IMG/VR virus record: IMGVR_UViG_3300011113_000640
Coordinates: 1-64,000 of that record
DNA: 64,000 nt
Reading direction: 5' to 3' (one strand)
Of this stretch, positions 21,494 to 34,486 are shown piece by piece. Under the pieces are notes generated by a model. That model had not been told where the DNA came from. It worked only from the letters and a program-made list of their open reading frames with translations, and searched no databases. The stretch's first letter is position 1. Each line of letters begins with the position of its first letter. A program made the translations under genes and the position numbers.

Positions 21494-21892
21494 TTAATCT
21501 CTGCTTTGTTTGGGCACATGCACCGCGGTACTCATGGTATCGTCTTTGGGACGTTCCTCACCGTCGGCAATCAGCAGAATGTCATCGGGATCAATTTTTC
21601 GTATGGTTCGTTTGGTCTTTCCAGATCCATCGTCTATGTCTACGCCTCTAGTCCAACGACCGTGTGCTACCAAGATCCACTGTCCTACTTGCACATCCTT
21701 TTGATCCCGGCCCACTGCATACACACGACCCCATCTAGGACGTATGCCCAGGGTAGTACCATTGTCATTGGGCAGGATCAAGCCGCTTTGTGTGATACGG
21801 GTATCAAATTCCATGTCTGAAACTATGACATTGTCGTGCAGGGCTTTGATTTGGTCTTGAGTAATTTGATGTGGTGCAAATGCTGGTTTCAT
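21494..21892 (-). CDS. groES: GroES/Cpn10-like co-chaperonin
   Basis: LHDNVIV..TQSGLILP..WGRVYAVG..VQVGQWILV..DDILLI. Confidence 0.85.
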   Translation of the reverse strand: MKPAFAPHQITQDQIKALHDNVIVSDMEFDTRITQSGLILPNDNGTTLGIRPRWGRVYAVGRDQKDVQVGQWILVAHGRWTRGVDIDDGSGKTKRTIRKIDPDDILLIADGEERPKDDTMSTAVHVPKQSRD

Positions 21893-22547: not shown

Positions 22548-23060
22548 TTAACGCAGGAATTCCGTGATATCTAAATTATAGTATAAACTGTCAATCCTAT
22601 GCACACCCAGCTTGTACAGCACAAAACTGGACACGCTGCTACCACGTCCAACGCCCCAGATGATGTTGTTGTCACGCATGACGTCAACTAGATACTTTAG
22701 ATATCGCAATAAATCAAACAAGTCACGTTCTTGATACAGCAGTAGTTCTGCGCCACAGCGTTGCAGTTCGGCTTCGGATTTGCACAGGTTTAAAACATGT
22801 TGCGCTATATCCAGTTGCTGGTATTCATTGGGCATGTACCATTGCTGTTGATTTGCGGCATGCCATTCTGGCACACTTAAAGTGTGGAATCTTTGTTGTT
22901 GAAATCCTGGCACAGGAGTTGCAGTGTTGGGCCAGCGGGTGAGATCCACTGACTGGTCAACGATCATGCCATCAAACACAGAAAAATCTCGGCCTTTCAT
23001 GACTAGATCAACCACGTCGTTTTGGTCAAAGATCAATTCACCAAATTTATTCTGTTTCAT
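22548..23060 (-). CDS. DNA polymerase III alpha (DnaE) fragment containing the GRGS region
   Basis: R..ELLLY...Y..YLVD..WGVGRGSSVSSFVLYKLGVHRID. Ends before the catalytic DxD. Confidence 0.85.
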   Translation of the reverse strand: MKQNKFGELIFDQNDVVDLVMKGRDFSVFDGMIVDQSVDLTRWPNTATPVPGFQQQRFHTLSVPEWHAANQQQWYMPNEYQQLDIAQHVLNLCKSEAELQRCGAELLLYQERDLFDLLRYLKYLVDVMRDNNIIWGVGRGSSVSSFVLYKLGVHRIDSLYYNLDITEFLR

Positions 23061-23655
23061 TGGGTTGTTTGAAATTGGCAAATACAACTACGTTTCCTAC
23101 ATCGGTTTCACTGGGAGTGTCAGTCCAGGCCATGTCAAGATCACGCCAGGCTGTGTTCTGTGCCAGGCTCACAATCTTGTCAGACTCTTCGGACACAATA
23201 TCACTGTGTACCAGGTCGGACGTGGACCACCAAGCAGGCTGTTCAAATCCCATGCTGTCTTCGAAATCACTGTGCAGGTAGGTTATGTTTTCTCCTAGAG
23301 CACTGGCCAGTTCAGTTTCCACTATGTTCATGCGCCCTTCTGTGATGGCATTGAGTTTAAAGTATAGCATGATACCTATGATTTGATCAACTGGTTCGCT
23401 GGGCATTGTGGTCACATTGACACCTGCTGTGGCCAATTTTCTGCAAACTTCTAAATGCTGATGATTCACAAACACAGTGCTGTCTAACTGCGTGTAGATA
23501 AAATATTTGATGCGCTCAAATGCTGTGTTTTGGTCCTCGGCATTTTTGGTTGTGGTGGTCATCCACAGCCTGACACTGTAGTTGTTCATGCGCAACTGGT
23601 CATTGTAATAGATGCCAGCGGTGAAATGCATGTCGTGTTTGAGTCTCACGTTCAT
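23047..23655 (-). CDS. Hypothetical protein, possible degenerate QueD/T-fold
   Basis: FTAG..NNYSVRL..FERIK..LDSTVF parallels the QueD layout but lacks the Zn-binding His residues. Confidence 0.55.
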   Translation of the reverse strand: MNVRLKHDMHFTAGIYYNDQLRMNNYSVRLWMTTTTKNAEDQNTAFERIKYFIYTQLDSTVFVNHQHLEVCRKLATAGVNVTTMPSEPVDQIIGIMLYFKLNAITEGRMNIVETELASALGENITYLHSDFEDSMGFEQPAWWSTSDLVHSDIVSEESDKIVSLAQNTAWRDLDMAWTDTPSETDVGNVVVFANFKQPNETE

Positions 23656-23917: not shown

Positions 23918-24802
23918 TCAGGCAAACACACAACCGTTGTTGCCAATACAGAACCATTTGCTGTTGATATACTGTAGCGTACAAGCATCTCCAATGGTAT
24001 CAAAGGTTATAGTTCCTGTGCCTGAAGTCTTCCAACCTGCATTGGTCACAGTGATCACCATGTCTCCACCGTCGGCAAACATGGCAAATGTTTTTATCTG
24101 GCCGTTTGCTCCGGCGGCCAAGGTTGCTGTGCTGGGTGCCACAGTGCTGAAATAACTGGTGGCCAATGCCAAATTAGCTGCTGCTGAGGCGGCTAAATTT
24201 TCACTGGAATTATTGAATGGTTGGATTTGTTTGTTGATTTCGTTGACAGTAATGGTGCTTCCACCGTTGCTGGTCACAAATGTAAAACTGTAAACGCCAG
24301 TGGCGGCAAAAGTTATTGTCCTGGTAGACGTGTTGTAACCCTGGATGCCTTGACCGTTGACTGTGACCGCAGCAGGTAACACCAGTGTGTGTATGATGTT
24401 GGCCACTGTGACCTGCACTGTGACCGAGGCAGCAGCGCCAGCGGCTGGAAAATTTGTAAATGCCAGGGTTACCGCACCATTGGTAGTCAAGGTCTGGTAG
24501 CTACCCAACGAATAATTTACAACGGTTGTACCGCTGACTGTGCCCAGACTGACCACGGATTCGCTCATGCCTTGCAACTGAGCATTGCTCAAAATACTAC
24601 CACCCATGTCGTTGTTGAGTGTGGTTCCTGTAAGCGCTGCTTTTAATACAGCTTTGTTTTGCAAATCTGTGATTTCGTTGGCAGCAAACTCAAAATTGGT
24701 TTGTGTGTTGGTAAAATTGTCGCGAAAGCCCTGACTGTTGTTGTCTTGCCCGGCTACCGGGTAATTGCCATCGATGTTATTGGGGTTTATATTACTTGTC
24801 AT
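23918..24802 (-). CDS. Virion structural protein (tail or baseplate associated)
   Basis: T/N/G/A-rich beta-type composition, N-terminal YPVAGQDNNSQGFRDNF, late TAAATA motif. Confidence 0.7.
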   Translation of the reverse strand: MTSNINPNNIDGNYPVAGQDNNSQGFRDNFTNTQTNFEFAANEITDLQNKAVLKAALTGTTLNNDMGGSILSNAQLQGMSESVVSLGTVSGTTVVNYSLGSYQTLTTNGAVTLAFTNFPAAGAAASVTVQVTVANIIHTLVLPAAVTVNGQGIQGYNTSTRTITFAATGVYSFTFVTSNGGSTITVNEINKQIQPFNNSSENLAASAAANLALATSYFSTVAPSTATLAAGANGQIKTFAMFADGGDMVITVTNAGWKTSGTGTITFDTIGDACTLQYINSKWFCIGNNGCVFA

Positions 24803-24845
24803 AAATTTTCCTGTTTTACCTTAGATATTTATCACAGCAAATGGG

Positions 24846-25292
24846 CTATGACCAATAAGTTATTGTTATAGAGCCTGAGCCGCCTGCACTGTTAGGACTT
24901 CCACCATTGGACCCAGAAGAAATCACCGCACCCGACGGTGCCAAACAGTTGCCGTTTTCTCCTGAATATGCACCATCGTCACCGCCATAGGTTAATCCTC
25001 CTGCACCACCAAGTTGGCCACCTCCACCACCTCCGCCACCAGCACCGTCACCACCGCCTTTGCCTTCACCGTAACCGCCATAGGTTGTGCCTGCGTTTCC
25101 GGGCGTGTTTTGATTGGGGCGTCCGGGCGAATACTGCCCACCACCTCCTCCACCTCCGCCGCCAGCGGCCACTGCTACCACGGTTCCATTGACAAAAATC
25201 ACACTAGCGCTGCCACCTCCACCTCCGCCACCGCTGTAACCGGATCCGCCAAAACTGCCTCCTAGTCCGCCTCGATAATCTATGCCTGGCAT
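24846..25292 (-). CDS. Glycine-rich protein, C-terminal half of a Gly-rich adhesin domain
   Basis: SGGGGGGGSASVIF..AVAAGGGGGGGGG..GGSGSITITYW. Own RBS (AGGA). Confidence 0.7.
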   Translation of the reverse strand: MPGIDYRGGLGGSFGGSGYSGGGGGGGSASVIFVNGTVVAVAAGGGGGGGGGQYSPGRPNQNTPGNAGTTYGGYGEGKGGGDGAGGGGGGGGQLGGAGGLTYGGDDGAYSGENGNCLAPSGAVISSGSNGGSPNSAGGSGSITITYWS

Positions 25293-25304
25293 ATTTGTTC
25301 CTGA

Positions 25305-25505
25305 TTAGTTTCTGATTTTCCAAGCAGAGTATGCTTGTATAATTTCATGCTCAGCAAAATTGGTTGTTCCACTGCGAATGTATTCTAGCAACGGCAAATT
25401 AGGTATAACTTTTGTTAAAATATCAGCATTGTCTCTTAGTAGTCTAAACAGGCGATCCTGATCTTGTTTACTTAAATTCATTACATTTTGATCTAGTGTG
25501 TTCAC
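25305..25505 (-). CDS. 66-aa hypothetical protein, part of insert
   Basis: ATGA overlap with the upstream gene. Confidence 0.6.
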   Translation of the reverse strand: MNTLDQNVMNLSKQDQDRLFRLLRDNADILTKVIPNLPLLEYIRSGTTNFAEHEIIQAYSAWKIRN

Positions 25506-26437
25506 AATTTATTACCTTCAATTATTTTTCCCAAGTTGGCTATTAATTTAAACAGCACAAAAACCGGAACCAACATTAGTCCTTTGCCAAACCCAGCTGG
25601 CTTGTTGCTCGGACCGATAACACGTTGCCATACTCCTACTGCTTTGCAAATAGGAACACCTGCGGCTGTGATCATGCGTCCAGTTAAATTATCTTTATCT
25701 TTTTTGCCCATCTTGTAGGCCATGTGTTCTGCCCACGGTGTAGCAATATCTTTTGCCCAGGCAACCGACCAACTCTGTGCTGATACACTGAATTCCGCAT
25801 CTGACATCCAAGGCATCATCTTAGGACCTGCACCGCTCATCCAGTCAACCACAATTTCTGCCCAGGCACGATATCCATTGTATATGTCTGGACGTGTCTT
25901 GAGCAATTCTGCTCCAAATGCTTGATCTGCTTCGTAGATTTCTTTGTCCATTAGGCCAAGTTCGTATAGCTTGGTGCAAATAATCTTGCCGCCACCACCG
26001 CCACCACCGCCACTGCCACCTGCGCCTCCACCGGCGCCCACATATAAATTAATTAGGTCTCCTGGGTTGGCTGCAAAAGTTCCACCAGTTACCGTCAAAC
26101 CCGGATAGCCAGAAATACCAGGATAACTGTCCGGTCCGCCACCGCCACCACCTCCGCCAGTCATGCTGGTTATTGTAACATTACCAATCACTGTCAAAGG
26201 CAACACAATGATATTGTCACCGGTGTTGGTCACTGTCAAAGTGGTCTGGATTCCTTTTCTTGCTCCATAAAAATCGCTGATAGAAATTTGTCCGGATGCC
26301 GGCACATTAGGGGCGTAATCAGTGTCCAGCACATAAGCACCACCTTTGTAATACATACTCAGGCTAAGTGGACTAGATCCACCAAATTCTGTCTGTATAT
26401 CAGTGAGCGAAAGTGGTCCAGAGCTGGGCAAGGCCAT
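25502..26437 (-). CDS. Tail-tip adhesin-like protein: attachment-type N-terminus, Gly-rich region, then a helical KIICT domain
   Basis: MALPSSGPLSLTDIQTEFGG..SLSMYY..ISISDFYG; GGGGGGGG-KIICTKLYELG. Confidence 0.7.
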   Translation of the reverse strand: MALPSSGPLSLTDIQTEFGGSSPLSLSMYYKGGAYVLDTDYAPNVPASGQISISDFYGARKGIQTTLTVTNTGDNIIVLPLTVIGNVTITSMTGGGGGGGGPDSYPGISGYPGLTVTGGTFAANPGDLINLYVGAGGGAGGSGGGGGGGGKIICTKLYELGLMDKEIYEADQAFGAELLKTRPDIYNGYRAWAEIVVDWMSGAGPKMMPWMSDAEFSVSAQSWSVAWAKDIATPWAEHMAYKMGKKDKDNLTGRMITAAGVPICKAVGVWQRVIGPSNKPAGFGKGLMLVPVFVLFKLIANLGKIIEGNKL

Positions 26438-27609
26438 TATAAAGTTCCAAAACCAGTGACGTTTCCGATAGTGGTAAAATTACCAGATGAATCTAGTTTG
26501 GCTATGTTTACACCGCTTCTTTGGAAATACAGAGCACCACTTATTTCTCTAAATGTCCATGTTGGTAGATTCAGAAGAGCGCCAGACACGTTTCCTGCTG
26601 TGCTCATTGATGCGCTGGCATTCAACGATGTCACGGCAATTGTTCCGCCAGTTATGGCCACATTATTGGCATATTGATTTATTTGATTGTTCACAAACGC
26701 AGTGGTAGCCACTTGATTGTTTGCAGTTCCTGTTACTGGATTGGGTGCGGTTACCAATCCTGACAGTGCAGTGGTTCCTGTTACTGCAAGGTTTCCACCA
26801 ATGGAGGTGTTTCCACCAATGGAGGTGTTTCCACCAATGGTAGCATTTCTTGTTACGGATATATTGCCAGTGGAAATAATATTACCTTGTGCAGTTATCA
26901 CTCCTAGCACTGTGAGTACATTAGAACCTTTGTTGTAGGTCAACCCGCCAACTGCATCAACGTTACCACTGGTATTGAATAAAACCTGCGTGTTAGAACC
27001 AGGAGCTCCTACGATGTTGCCTACAATGCTGCCTTGGAATGCACCAATGAAAAATGCATCGGTAATGATATTTCCCACAGCTGAAACCGCGGTCTGTGCC
27101 AACACACTGCCTGTGGTGCTGATATCAGCTGCTGCATTTATACTACCAATTGCGGTTATATTTGCACCCGAAATATTGCCACTTGCTGACATTATGCCAG
27201 CGGTGATAAGATTGCCAGCTGTCAAAGAACCTGTGGCAGAAATTGCACCGGTACTGGTTATTGCGCCAGAGGCTGTTACCGCCGCCACTGTTAAATTTCC
27301 TCCCACATTGGCATTCAATGCCACAGTCAAGGATGCTCCGGCAGTGACATTTCCAACTGCTGAAACGAACCCAGTGCTGAAAATGTTTCCAGTGGTCAAA
27401 CTTTCTGTGCTGACAATGTTTTCAGTGAAAATACTTCCGGACACAGATAAATTACTCAAGATTCCTACCGCAGTGATATTGGCCTGCACAGGATTGATCA
27501 CGGTGCCAGCGGTATTTGCGAAACCTGGAGTTACTGCAAAATTAGCATCCAGCTGGCTCAGTGGAATTGGGCTGGATTCGGTGCCAAAAGTGTATGGAAC
27601 TTGGGTCAT
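26437..27609 (-). CDS. Tail fibre-like protein with G-N-I/V repeats
   Basis: Repetitive GN[IV]xT/S motifs. Confidence 0.75.
   Translation of the reverse strand: MTQVPYTFGTESSPIPLSQLDANFAVTPGFANTAGTVINPVQANITAVGILSNLSVSGSIFTENIVSTESLTTGNIFSTGFVSAVGNVTAGASLTVALNANVGGNLTVAAVTASGAITSTGAISATGSLTAGNLITAGIMSASGNISGANITAIGSINAAADISTTGSVLAQTAVSAVGNIITDAFFIGAFQGSIVGNIVGAPGSNTQVLFNTSGNVDAVGGLTYNKGSNVLTVLGVITAQGNIISTGNISVTRNATIGGNTSIGGNTSIGGNLAVTGTTALSGLVTAPNPVTGTANNQVATTAFVNNQINQYANNVAITGGTIAVTSLNASASMSTAGNVSGALLNLPTWTFREISGALYFQRSGVNIAKLDSSGNFTTIGNVTGFGTL
26791..26840. repeat. 18-bp tandem repeat (about 2.8 copies) encoding IGGNTS
   Basis: GTTTCCACCAATGGAGGT twice plus 14 bp. Confidence 0.9.
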
Positions 27610-27619
27610 AATTATTGAT

Positions 27620-30370
27620 CTATTCTAAAATGTTACGTCTAGGAAACACAAGATATTTATCGAAATCCGTGGTGCTTGAACTTGAATACATATCAACTGG
27701 TGCTGTAAACAACAGACTGTTGCCATCAAATGTGGTTCCTTGACCTACATTGTTGCCATAGCCACGTGTGGCATAAGACCAGTCGGCCAAGGTCTGCAGA
27801 TTATCTTCCCAGGTGGTAATGACATTGGCATTGTTTTCCCAGGTGGCCAGACTTTGTCCTCGATCGTTCCAGTAAGTGGTATTGGTGGGCAGAATACCTG
27901 GAGTTGTAGGTAAAATACACTCATATAATTTGCTGATTCTATAAGCTGGTTCTAGACCCTGGAATACCACAGTTTGATAGATTACAGTATCACCAACTTG
28001 ATAGAAGGATCCTGTGGGCGCAGGCATGGCCCCAGTCACAGCAGTCCAGGTAATAAGGTCAGTTGAAATATAAGAATCTTGTGTGGCTAAAAATTGTTTC
28101 ACTTTCCAAGTGTTTCCAAAATCAACACTGTACATGATCCACTTAGAATCAACATCTCCAGCATACCTATAGGGACCAATTCGCTTGTAGGTTTGATTTG
28201 CTGCCAGGGTGCCTGCACCTGTGAGTGTGGTTTGATAAGGATCAAATGCTGGCACACCAAATATGTCGAACGTGGTAAGACTGGGCGGATAGGGGATCTG
28301 AGCGATGTTGTAATAACCCCAGTTCTGGCCCTCACGATTCCAGTTCTTGGTCAAGAAACCATCCAGTTCATATCTATCAACTTCATAGTCAATTTCATTG
28401 AGATTGCCTGCAAATAAGGTCTGTATGTTGTAAACGATTCTGTCAGCCTGTCCGGGTTTGGTATAGGCAATGACCCAGGCTGGCACATACCCTAGCACAG
28501 TGCCATCCGGTTGGCGGCTTAGTTGCCATCTAGGCAAGACGTTGCTGACCTGTCCCACAGTGTCTACAACCTGGTCTCGCATGTTTTGCAGGCTGTTGGG
28601 GTAGACCACGCTGATTTCGGTACTATCATCGGTGTAGACAGGAAATGGTAAGACCACTTGTTTGCCTACACTGACATCTTGGTTGTTGACCAAGTCGTCG
28701 ATTATTTTGCAGTAGACAACTTCATAGATCACTTCCCCATTGTCGTCTAATGCTCGAGCAGTTTCAATAGGGCCCAGCACTAGATTCTTCCAATAATGGT
28801 TGATATTCAAGCTGGCAACATAATCATCAATGGTGGCAGCTGTGAGTCCATAGGCATGATTGTAGACCACACGAGTAGCTACACCAAAGTTGGGATCATC
28901 GCCACGATAAATCAAGGCCGGAGTAAAGATATCAGGATTTTGCAACAGTGAATCCAAAGTGTTTCTATCATTGTTGGGCGGCATGGCCTGAATGTACAAA
29001 TTATCATAGGGCTGGTCGTAACGCCGTACCACTCGTATGGTAAATGTTTTGTTGGCGCTGACCAAGCCATTGAGGCTGTAGGCATTGACTGTGAACGTGC
29101 AAGTCATGTCAAATGTAGTGGGTTGATCCACGGTGTTTAATCCCACATCAAAGGTTGTGGTTCCACCATCTACGGCAAAAGTGTCAAAGCTCACACGACC
29201 AGCTATGTTGCCACTGGGCAACAGTTCTAGTCCCTGAGGCAGGCGGCTGTCACTGCCTGACAGCAGTTGATATTGCAGTGGAACATCAGCCACGTTACGA
29301 GCCGCTATATTAAATGTACTGGTGGCACCATTGTCAATCAGGCCAAGATCCGTAGGCGATAACCATACTACGTCGGTGTTGATGGTTCCCAGCACAGTGA
29401 GACTGTAGCTGTAAGGGTCACTGGCGTTGGAAGGATCGTTGATTTCTCTAACCACAAGCCGGAAGTCATAGGTTGTGTTACTTTGATTCAACAACGGTAC
29501 ATAACCATACAACCATCCTGAAATAGGATCTAGATTTAGCCCAGGTGGCAAGGCATCCAAGGCCACAAATTCAAATGGGTTGCCACTGTAGTTGGCACCA
29601 ACAAATTGAAATGCAAAAAAGTTATCACTGCGTGTGCTTCCTATGTTGCCCGGAGGCGTGATTATTACCGGAGGCGTGATGGTATTGGTATCTGCTGTGA
29701 TGTAGGTGTTGTCAGCTGTTATATAAGTAGTGTCTGCTGTGAGCAAAGATCGCGCATACACAAGGATGCTGAATGTTCTCACGTCACTACTGGTACCATT
29801 GCTGACTCTGAGAGTGAATGAATAGTCGGTTTGTGGCTGTGTGGCATTGGAATCTGGCGTGATATATCCTGATATAATGCCTGAATCAGAAACACTGAGA
29901 CCCGGAGGCAGTGTGCCGGCAATCAAGGTCACAACATCCACCCCAAAGACATTGGTATCATTGTATCGTACTTGCAGATCGACAACATCAACCCCATCGA
30001 TGTAATTGCCTATGTTGCCCGCGGGTGTGATCCAGGTTACGGTATTTTGATTGGTTATGGTAAGGCTAAAGGTTCTATCTGCCAAGCCTGTGATTGTGGT
30101 TCCATTTTCAGTATAGGCACGTACCACAAATGTGCTGGTGGTAGTTCTGGTAACGTCCAGTGCCGCGCCCTGAACAGTGGTGTCAGCATTGGGATTGCCA
30201 CTCAGCACACCGGTTTCATTGACCCAGATACCCGGAGGCAATCTACCAGCTATGACCTTGTAAAAAACTGTTTGTGGTGCAGTGGCTTCTAATATGATGT
30301 TACCATAAAACACACCTTCGGGTATGGTGCCCAAGGTGCCTGCTGCGGTTACCCATGTTGGTGTGGACAT
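27620..30370 (-). CDS. Large virion protein with Ig-like (He_PIG-type) repeats
   Basis: Repeated G.LPPGL....G.ISG motifs. Confidence 0.8.
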   Translation of the reverse strand: MSTPTWVTAAGTLGTIPEGVFYGNIILEATAPQTVFYKVIAGRLPPGIWVNETGVLSGNPNADTTVQGAALDVTRTTTSTFVVRAYTENGTTITGLADRTFSLTITNQNTVTWITPAGNIGNYIDGVDVVDLQVRYNDTNVFGVDVVTLIAGTLPPGLSVSDSGIISGYITPDSNATQPQTDYSFTLRVSNGTSSDVRTFSILVYARSLLTADTTYITADNTYITADTNTITPPVIITPPGNIGSTRSDNFFAFQFVGANYSGNPFEFVALDALPPGLNLDPISGWLYGYVPLLNQSNTTYDFRLVVREINDPSNASDPYSYSLTVLGTINTDVVWLSPTDLGLIDNGATSTFNIAARNVADVPLQYQLLSGSDSRLPQGLELLPSGNIAGRVSFDTFAVDGGTTTFDVGLNTVDQPTTFDMTCTFTVNAYSLNGLVSANKTFTIRVVRRYDQPYDNLYIQAMPPNNDRNTLDSLLQNPDIFTPALIYRGDDPNFGVATRVVYNHAYGLTAATIDDYVASLNINHYWKNLVLGPIETARALDDNGEVIYEVVYCKIIDDLVNNQDVSVGKQVVLPFPVYTDDSTEISVVYPNSLQNMRDQVVDTVGQVSNVLPRWQLSRQPDGTVLGYVPAWVIAYTKPGQADRIVYNIQTLFAGNLNEIDYEVDRYELDGFLTKNWNREGQNWGYYNIAQIPYPPSLTTFDIFGVPAFDPYQTTLTGAGTLAANQTYKRIGPYRYAGDVDSKWIMYSVDFGNTWKVKQFLATQDSYISTDLITWTAVTGAMPAPTGSFYQVGDTVIYQTVVFQGLEPAYRISKLYECILPTTPGILPTNTTYWNDRGQSLATWENNANVITTWEDNLQTLADWSYATRGYGNNVGQGTTFDGNSLLFTAPVDMYSSSSTTDFDKYLVFPRRNILE

Positions 30371-32907: not shown

Positions 32908-33234
32908 TTAGTAGGGGCTAAAACTACTGCCGCACCCGCAGGTGGTCTGGGCCTGAGGGTTGTTGATGGTAAAACTGGCACCCATGACATCGTCCTTGTA
33001 GTCAATTTCGGCACCTTGCAAGTAGCCACCACTCATTGAATCAACTAGGACTTTTACACCAGAAATCTCCAGGTCCCAATCGTCTTCGTTTTGTGTTTCG
33101 TCCAAGGTAAATCCGTAGCTCATTCCGCTACATCCGCCACCCTGTACAAACACTCTGAGTTTGAGGTTGGCATTGTTTTCTTCAGCCAAGATATCTTTGA
33201 TTTTGGTTACTGCGGATTCGGTCACCGTGATCAT
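32908..33234 (-). CDS. erpA: A-type Fe-S cluster carrier (ErpA/IscA family)
   Basis: [35 protein letters not shown]. Confidence 0.95.
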
Positions 33235-33785
33235 AAGCGTTCGTTGCAGACATCCCAGTCAATGATCTTCCAGATGTTGTCCAGGTATTTTTCTTTGTCC
33301 CATTGGTAATCTGTGGCCCAAACATGTTCCCACCAGTCCACCAGCACACAAATATCTGTACGAACTTGATGGTTGGGTATGGTTTTGATGGTGCCTGCGG
33401 TGCTCAAATACACCCAGCCGCTGCCTTGTATTTTCATGGCTGTTTCTTTAAAAGCCTGTTTGAAATCTTCGTAGGTTTTGAAGTTTGCTTCTATGAGCTC
33501 TAGTACAGCACCTCTAGGGCGGTTGGCACCTTTGACAGGTCTGAGTTGTGGAAAGAACTTGTTGTGCAAGAAACTGCCAGCACGGTTAAAGTCAGCGTTG
33601 CCTTCACCGGCATTGTATCTTTTTGCATAGCCCTTGGCCAAGTGTTCGTAGTGATAGTTGATGCTGTCTTTACTTAGAACCGGATCAAGATCGCCTTCGC
33701 CATAGGGCAGAGGAGTGGTTTCCAGCTTGGCTGGACGAGTCGATGCTTCTAGCAGATCTAGATCTTGTCTTATTGTATGATGCAT
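33231..33785 (-). CDS. Fe/Mn superoxide dismutase with N-terminal extension
   Basis: LPY..LDP..HY, FLHNKFF, GSGWVYL, DWWEH. The metal ligands appear intact. Confidence 0.9.
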
Positions 33786-33793
33786 GTGGATAT

Positions 33794-34486
33794 TTATGCG
33801 TTTAGTGCCTGTGCGTATCTGTCTTGCCACAAATCACAAGCAGCAGCGTGTGCTTCTTCCAGTGGATGTAACCCAGGCTCTGTTACTGTGAATCCGTGTT
33901 TGTAACTCCAATCTAAAAAAGTCAATCCTTCAAAGGTCTGCAACGGATCTCGAGTCAGATCTTGTAAGGTTTTAATATAGTCTGGTGCATGCCAGGTTGT
34001 GTCCCACATCTCAGAGTCCATGTAGGTTTGTATACTAGGAACATCGATATTTTTTAAAAATTGTTGCGCGGAGTATATGGTTTGTAAGGTTCTGAATTTA
34101 TCCCACAAGGTGCTGTGTCCTGGATACTTGTTATAGAACTCTAGTACTTTTTTTGCTTCTTCAAGTCCTACCAATGGTGCTAATTTAGGTGGTACACAAC
34201 TTAATCCTAGAGTTGTCCAAGTTTCCTTTCCGGGTACATAAAAATCCCAACGGGCTCCCCAAGTCCAGTTGATCACGGCCAACACATTATCATTGGAATT
34301 ATTGGAAAAATAAGTCAGAATCTGACGACTGATATTTTCATTTCCGCATCCAGGCACAGCCAAGGTTTGGTATTCGACTCCTAGTTTTGTTGCCGCCAGA
34401 CCAATCCAGGACCGACTACCGTTGTCGTTATTTTGCAGTTCTGAACCGAACACGAAACTGTCACCAAAACTTACAATCTTTTTCAT
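33794..34486 (-). CDS. SGNH/GDSL-like protein
   Basis: FGDSFVFG, AVPGCGNENI, LHPLEEAH. Confidence 0.65.
   Translation of the reverse strand: MKKIVSFGDSFVFGSELQNNDNGSRSWIGLAATKLGVEYQTLAVPGCGNENISRQILTYFSNNSNDNVLAVINWTWGARWDFYVPGKETWTTLGLSCVPPKLAPLVGLEEAKKVLEFYNKYPGHSTLWDKFRTLQTIYSAQQFLKNIDVPSIQTYMDSEMWDTTWHAPDYIKTLQDLTRDPLQTFEGLTFLDWSYKHGFTVTEPGLHPLEEAHAAACDLWQDRYAQALNA

What the first reader, a model, noticed from the sequence alone, without database searches (positions are those of the whole stretch)
24846..26437. Gly-rich tail adhesin gene split in two by a KIICT-domain plus 66-aa insert
Seen: the 311-aa ORF enters a Gly-rich domain (..VGAGGGAGGSGGGGGGGG) and switches abruptly to a ~160-aa helical, C-terminally hydrophobic KIICTKLYELG domain. 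After a 66-aa ORF, a separate ORF with its own RBS resumes the Gly-rich pattern (DYRGGLGG..SGGGGGGGSAS..VAVAAGGGGGG). Inference: a ~700-bp cassette entered at a poly-Gly (GGY-repeat) recombination hotspot. The adhesin may then assemble from two chains, with KIICT as a cleavable chaperone or membrane anchor. This could be a host-range switching mechanism.
Basis: partly seen in the sequence, partly recalled or inferred. Interest (0 to 1): 0.6.

Follow-up and report, generated by a model that had tools for sequence, protein, structure and literature searches.

The report
Phage adhesin split by domain cassette
In a freshwater jumbo phage, a glycine-rich tail-fibre adhesin gene has been cut into two co-folding pieces by a ~700-base cassette encoding a previously undescribed helical "KIICT" domain and a small helper gene, and the same cassette splits such adhesins at several other positions in many other phages.

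Summary
On the minus strand lie three ORFs. The first has 311 aa: an adhesin N-half of 150 aa fused in frame to a 161-aa KIICT domain. A 66-aa ORF overlaps its stop, and a 148-aa ORF with its own AGGA-N7-ATG follows. A syntenic relative (L035/P0159) carries one uninterrupted 316-aa gene that reads straight through both halves, and the difference is a clean ~700-nt insert. All four pieces are under purifying selection (dN/dS 0.08-0.19, dS above 1). A complex model has the two halves interleave into one domain (ipSAE 0.88, best control 0.00). The uninterrupted homologue folds like the ALK/LTK glycine-rich domain and the phage Pam3 and Bxb1 fibre tips.

KIICT is no one-off. At least 110 of the 150 best representative clusters end in it, on unrelated fibre proteins. 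It has no Pfam family or solved fold, and a small helical ORF usually follows. It splits Gly_rich_2 domains at four or more poly-Gly loops, sometimes with a Hint domain in front.

What KIICT does biochemically is unresolved: it may be an assembly cap or a membrane-binding tip. Host-range switching is untested.

The parts
25988..26437 (-). Residues 1-150 of the 311-aa ORF. It holds a conserved N-terminal module (motif SGPxSLxDIQxEFGG, roughly residues 1-60) and the N-terminal part of a TNF-like/glycine-rich (Gly_rich_2-type) adhesin domain, ending in a poly-Gly run.
   Evidence: It aligns to residues 1-154 of the uninterrupted P0159 and to other contiguous homologues. dN/dS is 0.11-0.19.
25505..25987 (-). 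KIICT domain (residues 151-311 of the same ORF; stop codon at 25502-25504). It is a six-helix bundle with a near-invariant Cys at domain position 4 and a hydrophobic last helix.
   Evidence: AF2 pLDDT 94.8. No Pfam, NCBIfam or PHROG family. No convincing PDB fold. Only uncultured-phage models match. Alignment A1 is. dN/dS is 0.08-0.13.
25305..25505 (-). 66-aa helical ORF, translationally coupled to the 311-aa ORF (GTG start overlaps its TGA stop). It belongs to a small-protein family found directly downstream of KIICT genes.
   Evidence: Family alignment A2 has a shared core, roughly L-S/T-x-E-E-K/Q...F...K...Y..W. dN/dS is about 0.17-0.18.
25299..25302 (-). Shine-Dalgarno-like AGGA, 7 nt upstream of the ATG of the 148-aa ORF. 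It is part of the insert's 3' end.
   Evidence: AGGA-N7-ATG is conserved in the window, L001, L004 and L006.
24846..25292 (-). 148-aa ORF: the C-terminal part of the same glycine-rich adhesin domain, translated as a separate chain.
   Evidence: It aligns to residues 153-316 of P0159 and to other contiguous homologues. dN/dS is 0.09-0.19. It is modelled to interleave with the N-half.
25291..25987 (-). The insert as a whole (697 nt): KIICT coding sequence, 66-aa ORF, spacer with AGGA, and the first two bases of the downstream ATG. It is absent from the syntenic uninterrupted allele in L035.
   Evidence: DNA alignment of the window, L001, L004 and L006 against L035. Synteny of L035. No terminal inverted repeats or target duplication; a (GGN)n cluster at 25988-26038 abuts the 5' junction.
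26437..27609 (-). Upstream 390-aa repetitive fibre-like protein: the conserved neighbour that defines the orthologous site.
23918..24802 (-). Downstream 294-aa conserved neighbour, used as an independent marker of phage relatedness.

Best explanation
An ancestral single-chain tail-fibre tip adhesin was split by the in-frame insertion of a ~700-nt cassette at the end of a poly-Gly-coding run. The adhesin had an N-terminal attachment module followed by a TNF-like/glycine-rich Gly_rich_2-type receptor-binding domain. The insertion loop also accepts whole-domain insertions in relatives.

The cassette brings three things: a 161-aa helical KIICT domain that can only be translated as a fusion to the upstream half; a translationally coupled small helical ORF; and a ribosome-binding site plus start codon that restarts translation of the downstream half. 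The phage therefore makes two chains, N-half-KIICT and C-half, whose strands and poly-Gly segments interleave to rebuild one adhesin domain. KIICT hangs from the loop where the chain is broken.

Shown: the insertion, the existence of an uninterrupted orthologue, the age of the split, selection on all four pieces, and recurrence of the same kind of split elsewhere. Inferred: the co-folding (model plus selection) and any role for KIICT.

For KIICT I commit to this reading. KIICT plus the small ORF is a portable fibre-end module, a C-terminal domain with its helper, that needs a free C-terminus. It most likely acts during fibre assembly as a cap or intramolecular-chaperone-like domain that can be removed. 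A retained membrane-binding tip is nearly as likely. The confidence of 0.7 applies to the split, two-chain reading. The cap role alone I put at about 0.4.
For: Insertion and orthologue:
- P0159 (316 aa) reads continuously through both halves. Its locus L035 has the same neighbours as the window.
- The DNA alignment shows one clean 701-column gap.

Fold and co-folding:
- The contiguous homologue's model hits the ALK/LTK glycine-rich domain (E 1.6e-6), the Bxb1 tail tip and the Pam3 fibre. Homologues P0290 and P0295 carry precomputed PF21722.
- The complex of N-half and 148-aa chain scores ipSAE 0.88 against a best control of 0.00. That mark was reached by 58 of 80 solved complexes and 2 of 110 mismatched pairs. 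There are about 500 contacts, run agreement is at least 95%, and the partner's pLDDT is at least 87.

Selection and copy number:
- dN/dS is 0.08-0.19 with dS above 1 for the N-half, KIICT, the 66-aa ORF and the C-half.
- Each half is single-copy in the 93%-complete genome.

Phylogeny:
- The split clade is monophyletic in the N-half tree (SH-aLRT 97), with contiguous genes as sister.

Recurrence:
- Gly_rich_2 is split at profile positions ~31, ~84, ~111-114 and ~167, and the next ORF resumes the domain each time.
- Relatives have a ~115-aa beta-sandwich inserted in the same loops.

KIICT as a module:
- It is C-terminal on unrelated fibre proteins in at least 110 of the 150 best representative clusters.
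- A small helical ORF follows in most loci.
- In some relatives a Hint autoprocessing domain sits exactly between the adhesin part and KIICT.
Against: - No protein or RNA data: no RNA run holds the region, so expression of the 148-aa chain rests on its RBS and on selection.
- The complex model may partly reflect memory of the single-chain ALK/Pam3 fold. It shows that the halves fit, not that they bind in a cell.
- The window's own pieces do not reach the Pfam Gly_rich_2 threshold, and hhalign against one bona fide domain failed.
- KIICT resembles no known chaperone, protease or membrane domain.
- A shorter KIICT subfamily lacks the hydrophobic helix.
- Many KIICT genes, such as the Cys/Asn-rich type, have no downstream resumed half. 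Splitting is therefore a consequence of where the module lands, not its purpose.
Confidence: 0.7

Rival explanations
1. KIICT is kept in the mature fibre as a membrane-active or membrane-anchoring tip. The Trp-rich amphipathic bundle with its hydrophobic last helix binds or inserts into a host membrane, or tethers the fibre protein to the inner membrane of the infected cell. It must be C-terminal for that reason, which forces the chain break.
For: - Hydrophobic last helix flanked by basic residues and conserved Trp residues.
- Six of 110 representatives have a TM-like hydrophobic stretch directly before KIICT.
- Sequence conservation across hosts is very high (dN 0.15-0.25 at saturated dS). 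That suits a conserved target such as a lipid surface better than a variable receptor.
Against: - A subfamily lacks the hydrophobic helix.
- A conserved Lys/Arg sits inside that helix, and AF2 packs it confidently into the bundle.
- No signal peptide is present, and there is no similarity to known pore-forming or anchor folds.
Confidence: 0.3
2. The cassette is a selfish mobile element of a new kind. KIICT (or the small ORF) promotes its own spread, for example as an unrecognised homing nuclease. The host adhesin merely tolerates the split, as ribonucleotide reductase tolerates mobE in phage Aeh1.
For: - Clean insertion with both host halves preserved.
- Occupied and empty alleles occur among close relatives. 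The empty one is nested among occupied ones: flank-gene tree 100/99, AU p 0.001; N-half tree SH-aLRT 100.
- Insertions lie at several sites and in tandem.
- Inteins or Hint domains are associated with the same junction.
Against: - No nuclease motif or family is detected. The fold is all-helical with few conserved polar residues.
- KIICT has no start codon of its own.
- It is also the normal C-terminus of large structural proteins with nothing resumed downstream.
- Within the clade the cassette follows the host gene's phylogeny, and dS is saturated, so there is no sign of recent spread.
- The N-half AU test does not reject the empty allele lying outside the clade (p 0.16).
Confidence: 0.1
3. 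The insert is removed after transcription or translation (intron, intein or ribosomal bypass), so the mature adhesin is one chain.
For: - The insertion is precise and leaves both coding parts intact.
- One lineage has lost it cleanly.
- Hint domains occur next to KIICT in some relatives.
Against: - No Rfam intron family matches, even at E up to 10.
- The base before the insert is not a conserved U, and the ends lack group II signatures.
- Two in-frame stops and a second ORF lie inside the insert.
- No Hint blocks are present in the window's copy, and the downstream ORF carries no C-intein.
- A conserved RBS and ATG sit exactly at the 3' junction.
- The insert's protein products are themselves under purifying selection.
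Confidence: 0.03
4. The adhesin was inactivated by the insertion. The 148-aa ORF is a relic, and only N-half-KIICT, or neither, is functional.
For: Gene disruption is the default outcome of an insertion, and no expression data exist.
Against: - The 148-150-aa ORF is intact with a conserved RBS in every split lineage examined.
- Its dN/dS is 0.09-0.19 over saturated dS.
- The same retention of the downstream piece is seen in at least six independent splits.
Confidence: 0.04

Closest known systems
Glycine-rich (polyglycine-II lattice) tail-fibre tip adhesins: cyanophage Pam3 gp24, Salmonella phage S16 gp38, mycobacteriophage Bxb1 tail tip; the same fold as the ALK/LTK TNF-like plus glycine-rich domain (Pfam PF21722 / PF12810)
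   Same: - N-terminal attachment part followed by a Gly-rich distal domain with repeated GGGGxGG runs.
- The model of the uninterrupted homologue matches ALK GRD, Bxb1 and Pam3 chains.
- Pam3 gp24 has a chaperone gene directly downstream (PMC9608196).
   Different: - Those adhesins are single polypeptides; here the domain is encoded in two genes with a foreign helical domain fused to the first.
- Sequence similarity to the Pfam model is below threshold for the window's pieces.
Genes-in-pieces made by free-standing homing-endonuclease cassettes in T4-like phages (mobE in Aeh1 nrdA; the mobA / gene 60-39 cassette), reviewed in PMC2988022
   Same: A short cassette sits inside a conserved gene. 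Both halves remain expressed as separate chains that reassemble, and occupied and empty alleles coexist among relatives.
   Different: - No recognisable endonuclease is present.
- The main cassette product is fused in frame to the upstream half.
- The target is a hypervariable adhesin loop rather than a conserved enzyme motif.
- The same domain is also an ordinary C-terminus of many unsplit proteins.
C-terminal intramolecular chaperone domains of phage fibres and spikes (Peptidase_S74 of endosialidases and T5 pb1) and separate fibre chaperone caps (PMC10579305)
   Same: A conserved module of ~150-160 residues at the C-terminus of otherwise unrelated fibre proteins. Relatives carry an autoprocessing (Hint) domain at the junction, which suggests release.
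   Different: No sequence or fold similarity. No Ser-Lys dyad, and cleavage is not shown. Here the module sits in the middle of a domain rather than after it.
Polymorphic toxin / immunity cassettes (C-terminal domain, sometimes after a pretoxin Hint, plus a small downstream ORF)
   Same: A C-terminal module on diverse delivery-type N-terminal regions, an occasional Hint in front, and a small helical ORF immediately downstream.
   Different: - Here the C-terminal domain is the conserved part and the N-termini vary.
- The domain has few conserved polar residues.
- It was found in only 1 MAG contig among one genome each of 185,579 species, and is otherwise viral.

Membership tests
Gly_rich_2 / ALK-LTK glycine-rich (TG) adhesin domain (PF21722, PF12810) | Sequence match to the Pfam model above its gathering score | tested here: inconclusive
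   The window's N-half and C-half give no hit, even at E up to 10. Contiguous homologues are weak: P0218 E 0.44 over profile 7-226, P0186 E 0.0027. However, homologues P0290 and P0295 carry a precomputed PF21722, and other KIICT-bearing proteins pass (L008 34.9 bits, P0174 63.5 bits). hhalign against one domain failed.
Gly_rich_2 / ALK-LTK glycine-rich (TG) adhesin domain (PF21722, PF12810) | TNF-like beta-sandwich carrying a lattice of extended poly-Gly segments | tested here: met
   The AF2 model of the uninterrupted orthologue P0159 (pLDDT 79) has as its best 24 PDB matches only ALK/LTK glycine-rich domains, the Bxb1 tail tip and the Pam3 fibre (best E 1.6e-6, probability 1.00). TM-scores are low, 0.25-0.39.
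Free-standing homing-endonuclease 'genes in pieces' cassette | Insert splits a gene whose two halves both stay intact and under selection, with empty alleles in relatives | tested here: met
Free-standing homing-endonuclease 'genes in pieces' cassette | Cassette encodes a recognisable homing endonuclease (GIY-YIG, HNH, LAGLIDADG, etc.) | tested here: not met
   No Pfam, NCBIfam or PHROG family for KIICT or the 66-aa ORF. The fold is all-helical with no nuclease match.
Intein / split intein | Hint splicing blocks in the insert and an open frame through it (or a C-intein at the start of the second chain) | tested here: not met
   No Hint family in the 311-aa ORF. There are stops at 25502-25504 and 25305-25307. 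The 148-aa ORF starts directly in adhesin sequence. Hint domains do occur upstream of KIICT in relatives P0149, P0164, P0212 and P0255.
Group I / group II self-splicing intron | Match to intron covariance models; conserved splice-site features | tested here: not met
   Rfam scan of 24000-27000 at E up to 10 gave only two chance-level hits to unrelated families. The base before the insert varies between C and T.
C-terminal intramolecular chaperone domain (Peptidase_S74 type) | Sequence or fold match to the family; autocatalytic release | tested here: not met
   No Pfam hit and no fold match. Release is not testable with these tools. Only the positional analogy holds: a conserved C-terminal module on diverse fibres.
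Polymorphic toxin-immunity system | Variable C-terminal toxin on a conserved N-terminal region; occurrence in bacterial genomes | tested here: not met
   The C-terminal domain is the conserved part. There was one MAG contig hit in the genome collection. That search finds close relatives only.

The most novel reading that the evidence does not exclude
KIICT cassettes are a new class of portable protein-domain cassette. They spread among phage adhesin genes through poly-Gly-coding (GGN)n microhomology. By breaking Gly_rich_2 domains at permissive loops, they turn one-chain adhesins into non-covalently linked multi-subunit fibres. In L030 and L032, successive proteins each begin with the C-part of one split domain and end with the N-part of the next plus KIICT. 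This amounts to a 'daisy chain' held together by split-domain complementation, which would let distal fibre segments be exchanged as separate genes. A still bolder and much less likely version (about 3%) is that the invariant Cys next to the poly-Gly tail makes KIICT a self-removing transpeptidase that re-ligates the two chains.
Probability: 0.3. Interest if true: 0.85.

Novelty: new variant of a known kind. Interest (0 to 1): 0.72.

Why it matters
- **Split adhesins are easily missed.** Tail-fibre tips decide which bacteria a phage can infect, and annotation and host-range prediction treat them as single genes. Here a receptor-binding domain is stably encoded in two genes. The same splitting module recurs in hundreds of uncultured aquatic phages and in at least one cultured cyanophage (SynMITS9220M01), so a class of adhesins is being read as unrelated 'hypothetical' fragments.
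- **KIICT is unexplained.** It is abundant, strongly conserved, virus-restricted and has no family, solved fold or literature in the sources searched here.
- **The split is a natural complementation experiment.** It shows that the polyglycine-lattice fold, shared with the human ALK/LTK ligand-binding domain, tolerates chain breaks and whole-domain insertions at its poly-Gly loops. That is useful for engineering fibre tips.

Tried and rejected
- **Family scans.** Pfam, NCBIfam and PHROGs on the three ORFs gave nothing useful. The only hits were a weak PHROG of unknown function on residues 1-72 and a chance ATG5 hit on the 66-aa ORF.
- **Phage DNA search.** blastn of 24000-28000 against GenBank phages gave no match.
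- **Intron test.** The Rfam scan gave two chance-level hits only.
- **Fold searches for KIICT.** Foldseek against PDB had nothing at E 0.001 or better. VIA-align wide gave a best Z of 5.8 to the helical NEL domain of SspH1/SlrP, which is below the noise level quoted for helical bundles. I do not count it as a match.
- **Profile comparison.** hhalign of the contiguous-homologue profile against one bona fide Gly_rich_2 domain gave probability 0.9%. Low-complexity sequence defeats it.
- **Word-index search with the 148-aa chain.** Only 5 hits, because poly-Gly gives few usable words. This says nothing about how common the chain is.
- **Reads.** No RNA run holds the region. Contigs laid from four DNA runs gave many 'joints', but all have sides of 18-27 nt at (GGN)n runs. 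They are therefore cross-matches from other Gly-rich genes, not cassette-free variants.
- **Atlas feature search for the 66-aa ORF.** No usable hit.
- **Genome-collection scan.** The single domain found one MAG contig.
- **N-half AU test.** It did not reject placing the uninterrupted allele outside the split clade (p 0.16). The nested position rests on SH-aLRT 100 and on the flanking gene (AU p 0.001).
- **Transposon signatures.** Terminal inverted repeats or a target-site duplication at the insert ends were looked for and not found.
Full report
**Setting.** The window is the first 64 kb of a 320.5-kb IMG/VR virus record, estimated 93% complete: a jumbo phage. Near-identical DNA turns up in lake and freshwater metagenomes from at least 14 studies. 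The finding lies in a run of minus-strand structural genes. Upstream are a 916-aa protein and a 390-aa repetitive fibre-like protein. Downstream is a conserved 294-aa protein.

**Observation.**
- 26437..25502 encodes 311 aa. Residues 1-150 end in a poly-Gly run, and residue 151 begins K-I-I-C-T.
- 25505..25305 encodes 66 aa. Its GTG start overlaps the TGA of the first ORF.
- After a 12-nt spacer containing AGGA, 7 nt from the ATG, 25292..24846 encodes a 148-aa Gly-rich protein.
- The same layout occurs in independent assemblies: a 337-kb contig (L001), L002 and L004-L006. One contig from an unrelated study spans the whole insert. It is not an assembly artefact.

**Is it really one gene in two pieces? 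Yes.** An exhaustive profile search with the 311-aa protein found two kinds of hit besides full-length relatives: proteins matching only residues ~150-310, and proteins matching only residues 1-150. Among the second kind, P0159 (316 aa) continues from the N-half straight into the sequence of the 148-aa ORF. It reads ...GGGESGSDYRGGLGGSFGG..., where the window's second chain starts MPGIDYRGGLGGSFGG. Several more distant homologues are also contiguous: P0288, P0218, P0203, P0217 and P0253.

P0159's locus (L035) has the same neighbours as the window: a 335-aa fibre-like gene upstream, then 302-, 73- and 203-aa genes and a DnaE fragment downstream. It is therefore the orthologous site without the insert. 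The DNA alignment shows a single gap of 701 columns. The insert runs from the AAG of K-I-I-C-T to the AT of the downstream ATG. It is flanked 5' by (GGN)n and has no terminal repeats or target duplication.

**What the interrupted gene is.** The AF2 model of the uninterrupted P0159 (pLDDT 79) has as its best PDB matches only three groups:
- the TNF-like plus glycine-rich ligand-binding domain of ALK/LTK (best E 1.6e-6);
- the mycobacteriophage Bxb1 tail tip;
- the cyanophage Pam3 fibre.

In Pam3 gp24 and S16 gp38 this fold is the distal, receptor-recognising tip of the fibre, built of stacked extended poly-Gly segments with variable loop ends (PMC9608196). The window's pieces are too divergent and too low in complexity to reach the Pfam Gly_rich_2 threshold. 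Homologues P0290 and P0295 do carry PF21722. I therefore call it a Gly_rich_2-type adhesin on fold and homology, with sequence-model membership inconclusive.

**Do the two chains still work together?** Four lines of evidence say so.
- The N-half, KIICT, the 66-aa ORF and the C-half all show dN/dS of 0.08-0.19 between lineages whose synonymous sites are saturated. All four have been kept as proteins for a long time.
- The RBS and start codon of the C-half are conserved at the 3' junction.
- The genome holds one copy of each half and no other Gly_rich_2 match. Each is the other's only possible partner.
- A complex prediction of residues 1-150 with the 148-aa chain scored ipSAE 0.88 against a best control of 0.00. 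That mark was reached by 58 of 80 solved complexes and 2 of 110 mismatched pairs. There were about 500 contacts, run agreement of at least 95% and partner pLDDT of at least 87. Strands of one chain pair with strands of the other, for example 130-133 with 30-33 and 65-68 with 142-146.

This shows that the halves fit as one domain. Because a single-chain version of the fold is solved, it may owe something to memory. It is not proof of binding.

**History.**
- In a tree of N-halves the split genes form one clade (SH-aLRT 97), with contiguous genes (P0288, P0218) as sister.
- The uninterrupted P0159 sits deep inside that clade (SH-aLRT 100). Its nearest relatives are split genes at 81% identity over the N-half alignment.
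- An AU test on these 152 columns does not reject the alternative (p 0.16).
- The adjacent 294-302-aa gene gives the same answer independently. L035 groups with the split phages L004 and L006 (100/99), and a split-only clade is rejected (AU p 0.001).

The simplest history is one old insertion followed by one clean loss, or replacement by an uninterrupted allele. The caveat is that neighbouring phage genes can have different histories.

**The inserted domain is a widespread module.** In viral contigs, most tblastn matches to the 311-aa protein cover only residues ~151-307, at 62-78% identity, behind quite different N-terminal parts. These include long Gly-rich adhesins, a laminin-G protein, Ala/Gly-rich proteins and a large group of Cys/Asn-rich ('NCNC') proteins.

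Among the 150 best representative clusters at 50% identity, 110 carry the [K/S]-[I/V]-[I/V]-C motif, always 110-185 residues from the C-terminus, in proteins of 128 to 1859 aa. What lies directly before it varies:

| Upstream of the motif | Clusters |
|---|---|
| poly-Gly | 64 |
| Cys-rich sequence | 10 |
| other | 36 |

N-terminal partners include DUF4815, He_PIG Ig repeats, PA14 and Gly_rich_2.

The domain models as a six-helix bundle at pLDDT 94.8. It has no Pfam, NCBIfam or PHROG family and no convincing solved fold. Only models of uncultured tailed-phage proteins match. Invariant or nearly invariant positions are I3, C4, G11, A20, D21, G25, G38, Y39, W42, W49, W77, P84, W85 and several Gly. 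Its conservation across contexts reflects constraint, not recent transfer: dS is saturated and dN is 0.15-0.25.

Only one record in the INPHARED phage collection searched, the cultured Synechococcus phage SynMITS9220M01, has the domain, in its tail-fibre module. There too it is followed by a small ORF and then an ORF beginning MAKAGGGGGG. Only one MAG contig among one genome each of 185,579 prokaryote species matched. I found no paper on it in the held library.

**The companion ORF.** A small, apparently helical ORF of 66-134 aa directly follows KIICT in most loci examined, often overlapping its stop. The copies form at least two sequence families. One is aligned in A2. The other, with a C-x-F-Y-N-A-L motif, goes with a KIICT subfamily. 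It is absent after some copies (L030 first, L032 second, L025).

**The split recurs at different places.** Wherever a KIICT gene ends part-way through a Gly_rich_2 domain, the next ORF, or the next after the small ORF, resumes the domain. It begins M-[A/P]-x followed by a Gly run.

| Break at profile position | Locus | Detail |
|---|---|---|
| ~31 | L039 | N-part 3-31; next ORF 34-155 |
| ~84 | L038, and by homology the window | in a 1002-aa protein |
| ~111-114 | L008, L032, second gene of L030 | |
| ~167 | L037, first gene of L030 | L037 is syntenic with the window and has a 67-aa C-piece |

In L030 and L032, successive proteins each start with the C-part of one split domain and end with the N-part of the next plus KIICT. 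In L008 the resumed piece itself ends in a second KIICT (88% identical, dS 0.61).

Uninterrupted relatives carry a ~115-aa beta-sandwich inserted at the same poly-Gly loops: P0186 at the window's site, P0216 and P0229 at two others. These loops are therefore permissive for large additions, which explains why a chain break there is tolerated.

**Clues to what KIICT does.**
- *Hint domain at the junction.* In several relatives a complete Hint domain sits exactly between the adhesin part and KIICT. It runs from C-F-x-P-D to I-V-H-N, and Hom_end_hint is above its cut-off in P0164 and P0255. The junction reads ...GGGC | Hint | K-KIICT. Mostly a Lys follows the terminal Asn, so cleavage is more plausible than splicing. 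One (P0255) has Cys there. This argues that separating KIICT from the adhesin is tolerated or wanted.
- *Hydrophobic features.* Six representatives have a TM-like hydrophobic stretch right before KIICT. The domain's own last helix is hydrophobic with basic flanks. However, a shorter subfamily lacks that helix.
- *Few polar invariants.* The conserved positions are mostly Gly, Trp, Ala and Pro. That looks more like a binding or assembly scaffold than an enzyme.

On balance I favour a portable fibre-end module that needs a free C-terminus and acts in assembly, possibly removed afterwards (about 0.4). A retained membrane-binding tip is close behind (about 0.3). A selfish role is less likely (about 0.1).

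**Rejected readings.**
- *RNA or protein splicing is very unlikely.* There is no intron model match and no conserved splice-site bases. The insert contains stops and a second ORF. The window's copy has no Hint. A conserved RBS and ATG sit at the junction.
- *Pseudogenisation is contradicted by the selection data*.

**Verdict.** The insertion and two-chain ideas are supported. The chaperone-or-anchor question is open, and host-range switching is untested. The case extends the known 'genes in pieces' theme to a receptor-binding domain. The splitting agent is an unrecognised, abundant, virus-specific domain module rather than a known endonuclease.

Noticed in passing
window 22548..23087 (-): A stand-alone 179-aa ORF matches only positions 25-94 of the 260-position DnaE NTPase-domain model (PF07733, 33 bits). 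A similar small ORF is conserved at the same place in relatives (L001 185 aa, L035 184 aa, L037). The replicative polymerase of this phage clade may also be encoded in pieces.
   Followed up: partly
L037:2619-4154; also P0149, P0212, P0255, P0197: Complete Hint (mini-intein-like) domains are inserted exactly between the Gly-rich part and KIICT. Most have Lys rather than Cys/Ser/Thr after the terminal His-Asn, so they look like cleaving rather than splicing Hint domains.
   Followed up: partly
P0186, P0216, P0229/P0290/P0295/P0298 (alignment A3); L007:2564-4480: A ~115-aa beta-sandwich domain (motif FLNxYGVW...) is inserted at three different poly-Gly loops of otherwise contiguous adhesins. One of these is the very loop where the window has the KIICT cassette.
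   Followed up: partly
L030:3431-6890 and L032:1038-4766: Tandem 'daisy chains': each protein starts with the C-part of one split Gly_rich_2 domain and ends with the N-part of the next plus KIICT. They sit between T7-like tail-fibre genes.
   Followed up: partly
L012-L034 (for example L012:3605-4510): A large group of ~300-aa proteins share the window protein's N-terminal motif but have a Cys/Asn-rich 'NCNC' low-complexity region instead of poly-Gly, ending ...NCNCS-KIICT. They are followed by two paralogous small ORFs and by conserved ~230-aa and ~180-aa genes whose families were not tested.
   Followed up: no
window 33231..33830 (-) and 21494..21892 (-): The phage encodes an Fe/Mn superoxide dismutase (Sod_Fe_C, 73 bits) and a Cpn10/GroES-like protein.
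   Followed up: no
window 27620..30370 (-): A 916-aa protein with several repeats of an L-P-P-G-L...S-G-x-I-S-G motif, reminiscent of the He_PIG Ig repeats seen in KIICT-bearing P0155. No Pfam hit was found.
   Followed up: no
contig of sample ERZ1426826 (no DNA held), gene four places upstream of P0159 (three genes between): A 536-aa protein cut by the locus end has an Mtd_N hit (N-terminal domain of the Bordetella phage major tropism determinant). This hints at a diversity-generating retroelement target in the same fibre module of a relative.
   Followed up: no
L041 (JAUYFO010000059.1, 15-kb contig of a Candidatus Moraniibacteriota MAG): This is the only match to KIICT in the genome collection (38% identity over residues 1-118). 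It could be a mis-binned phage contig or a prophage in a CPR bacterium.
   Followed up: no
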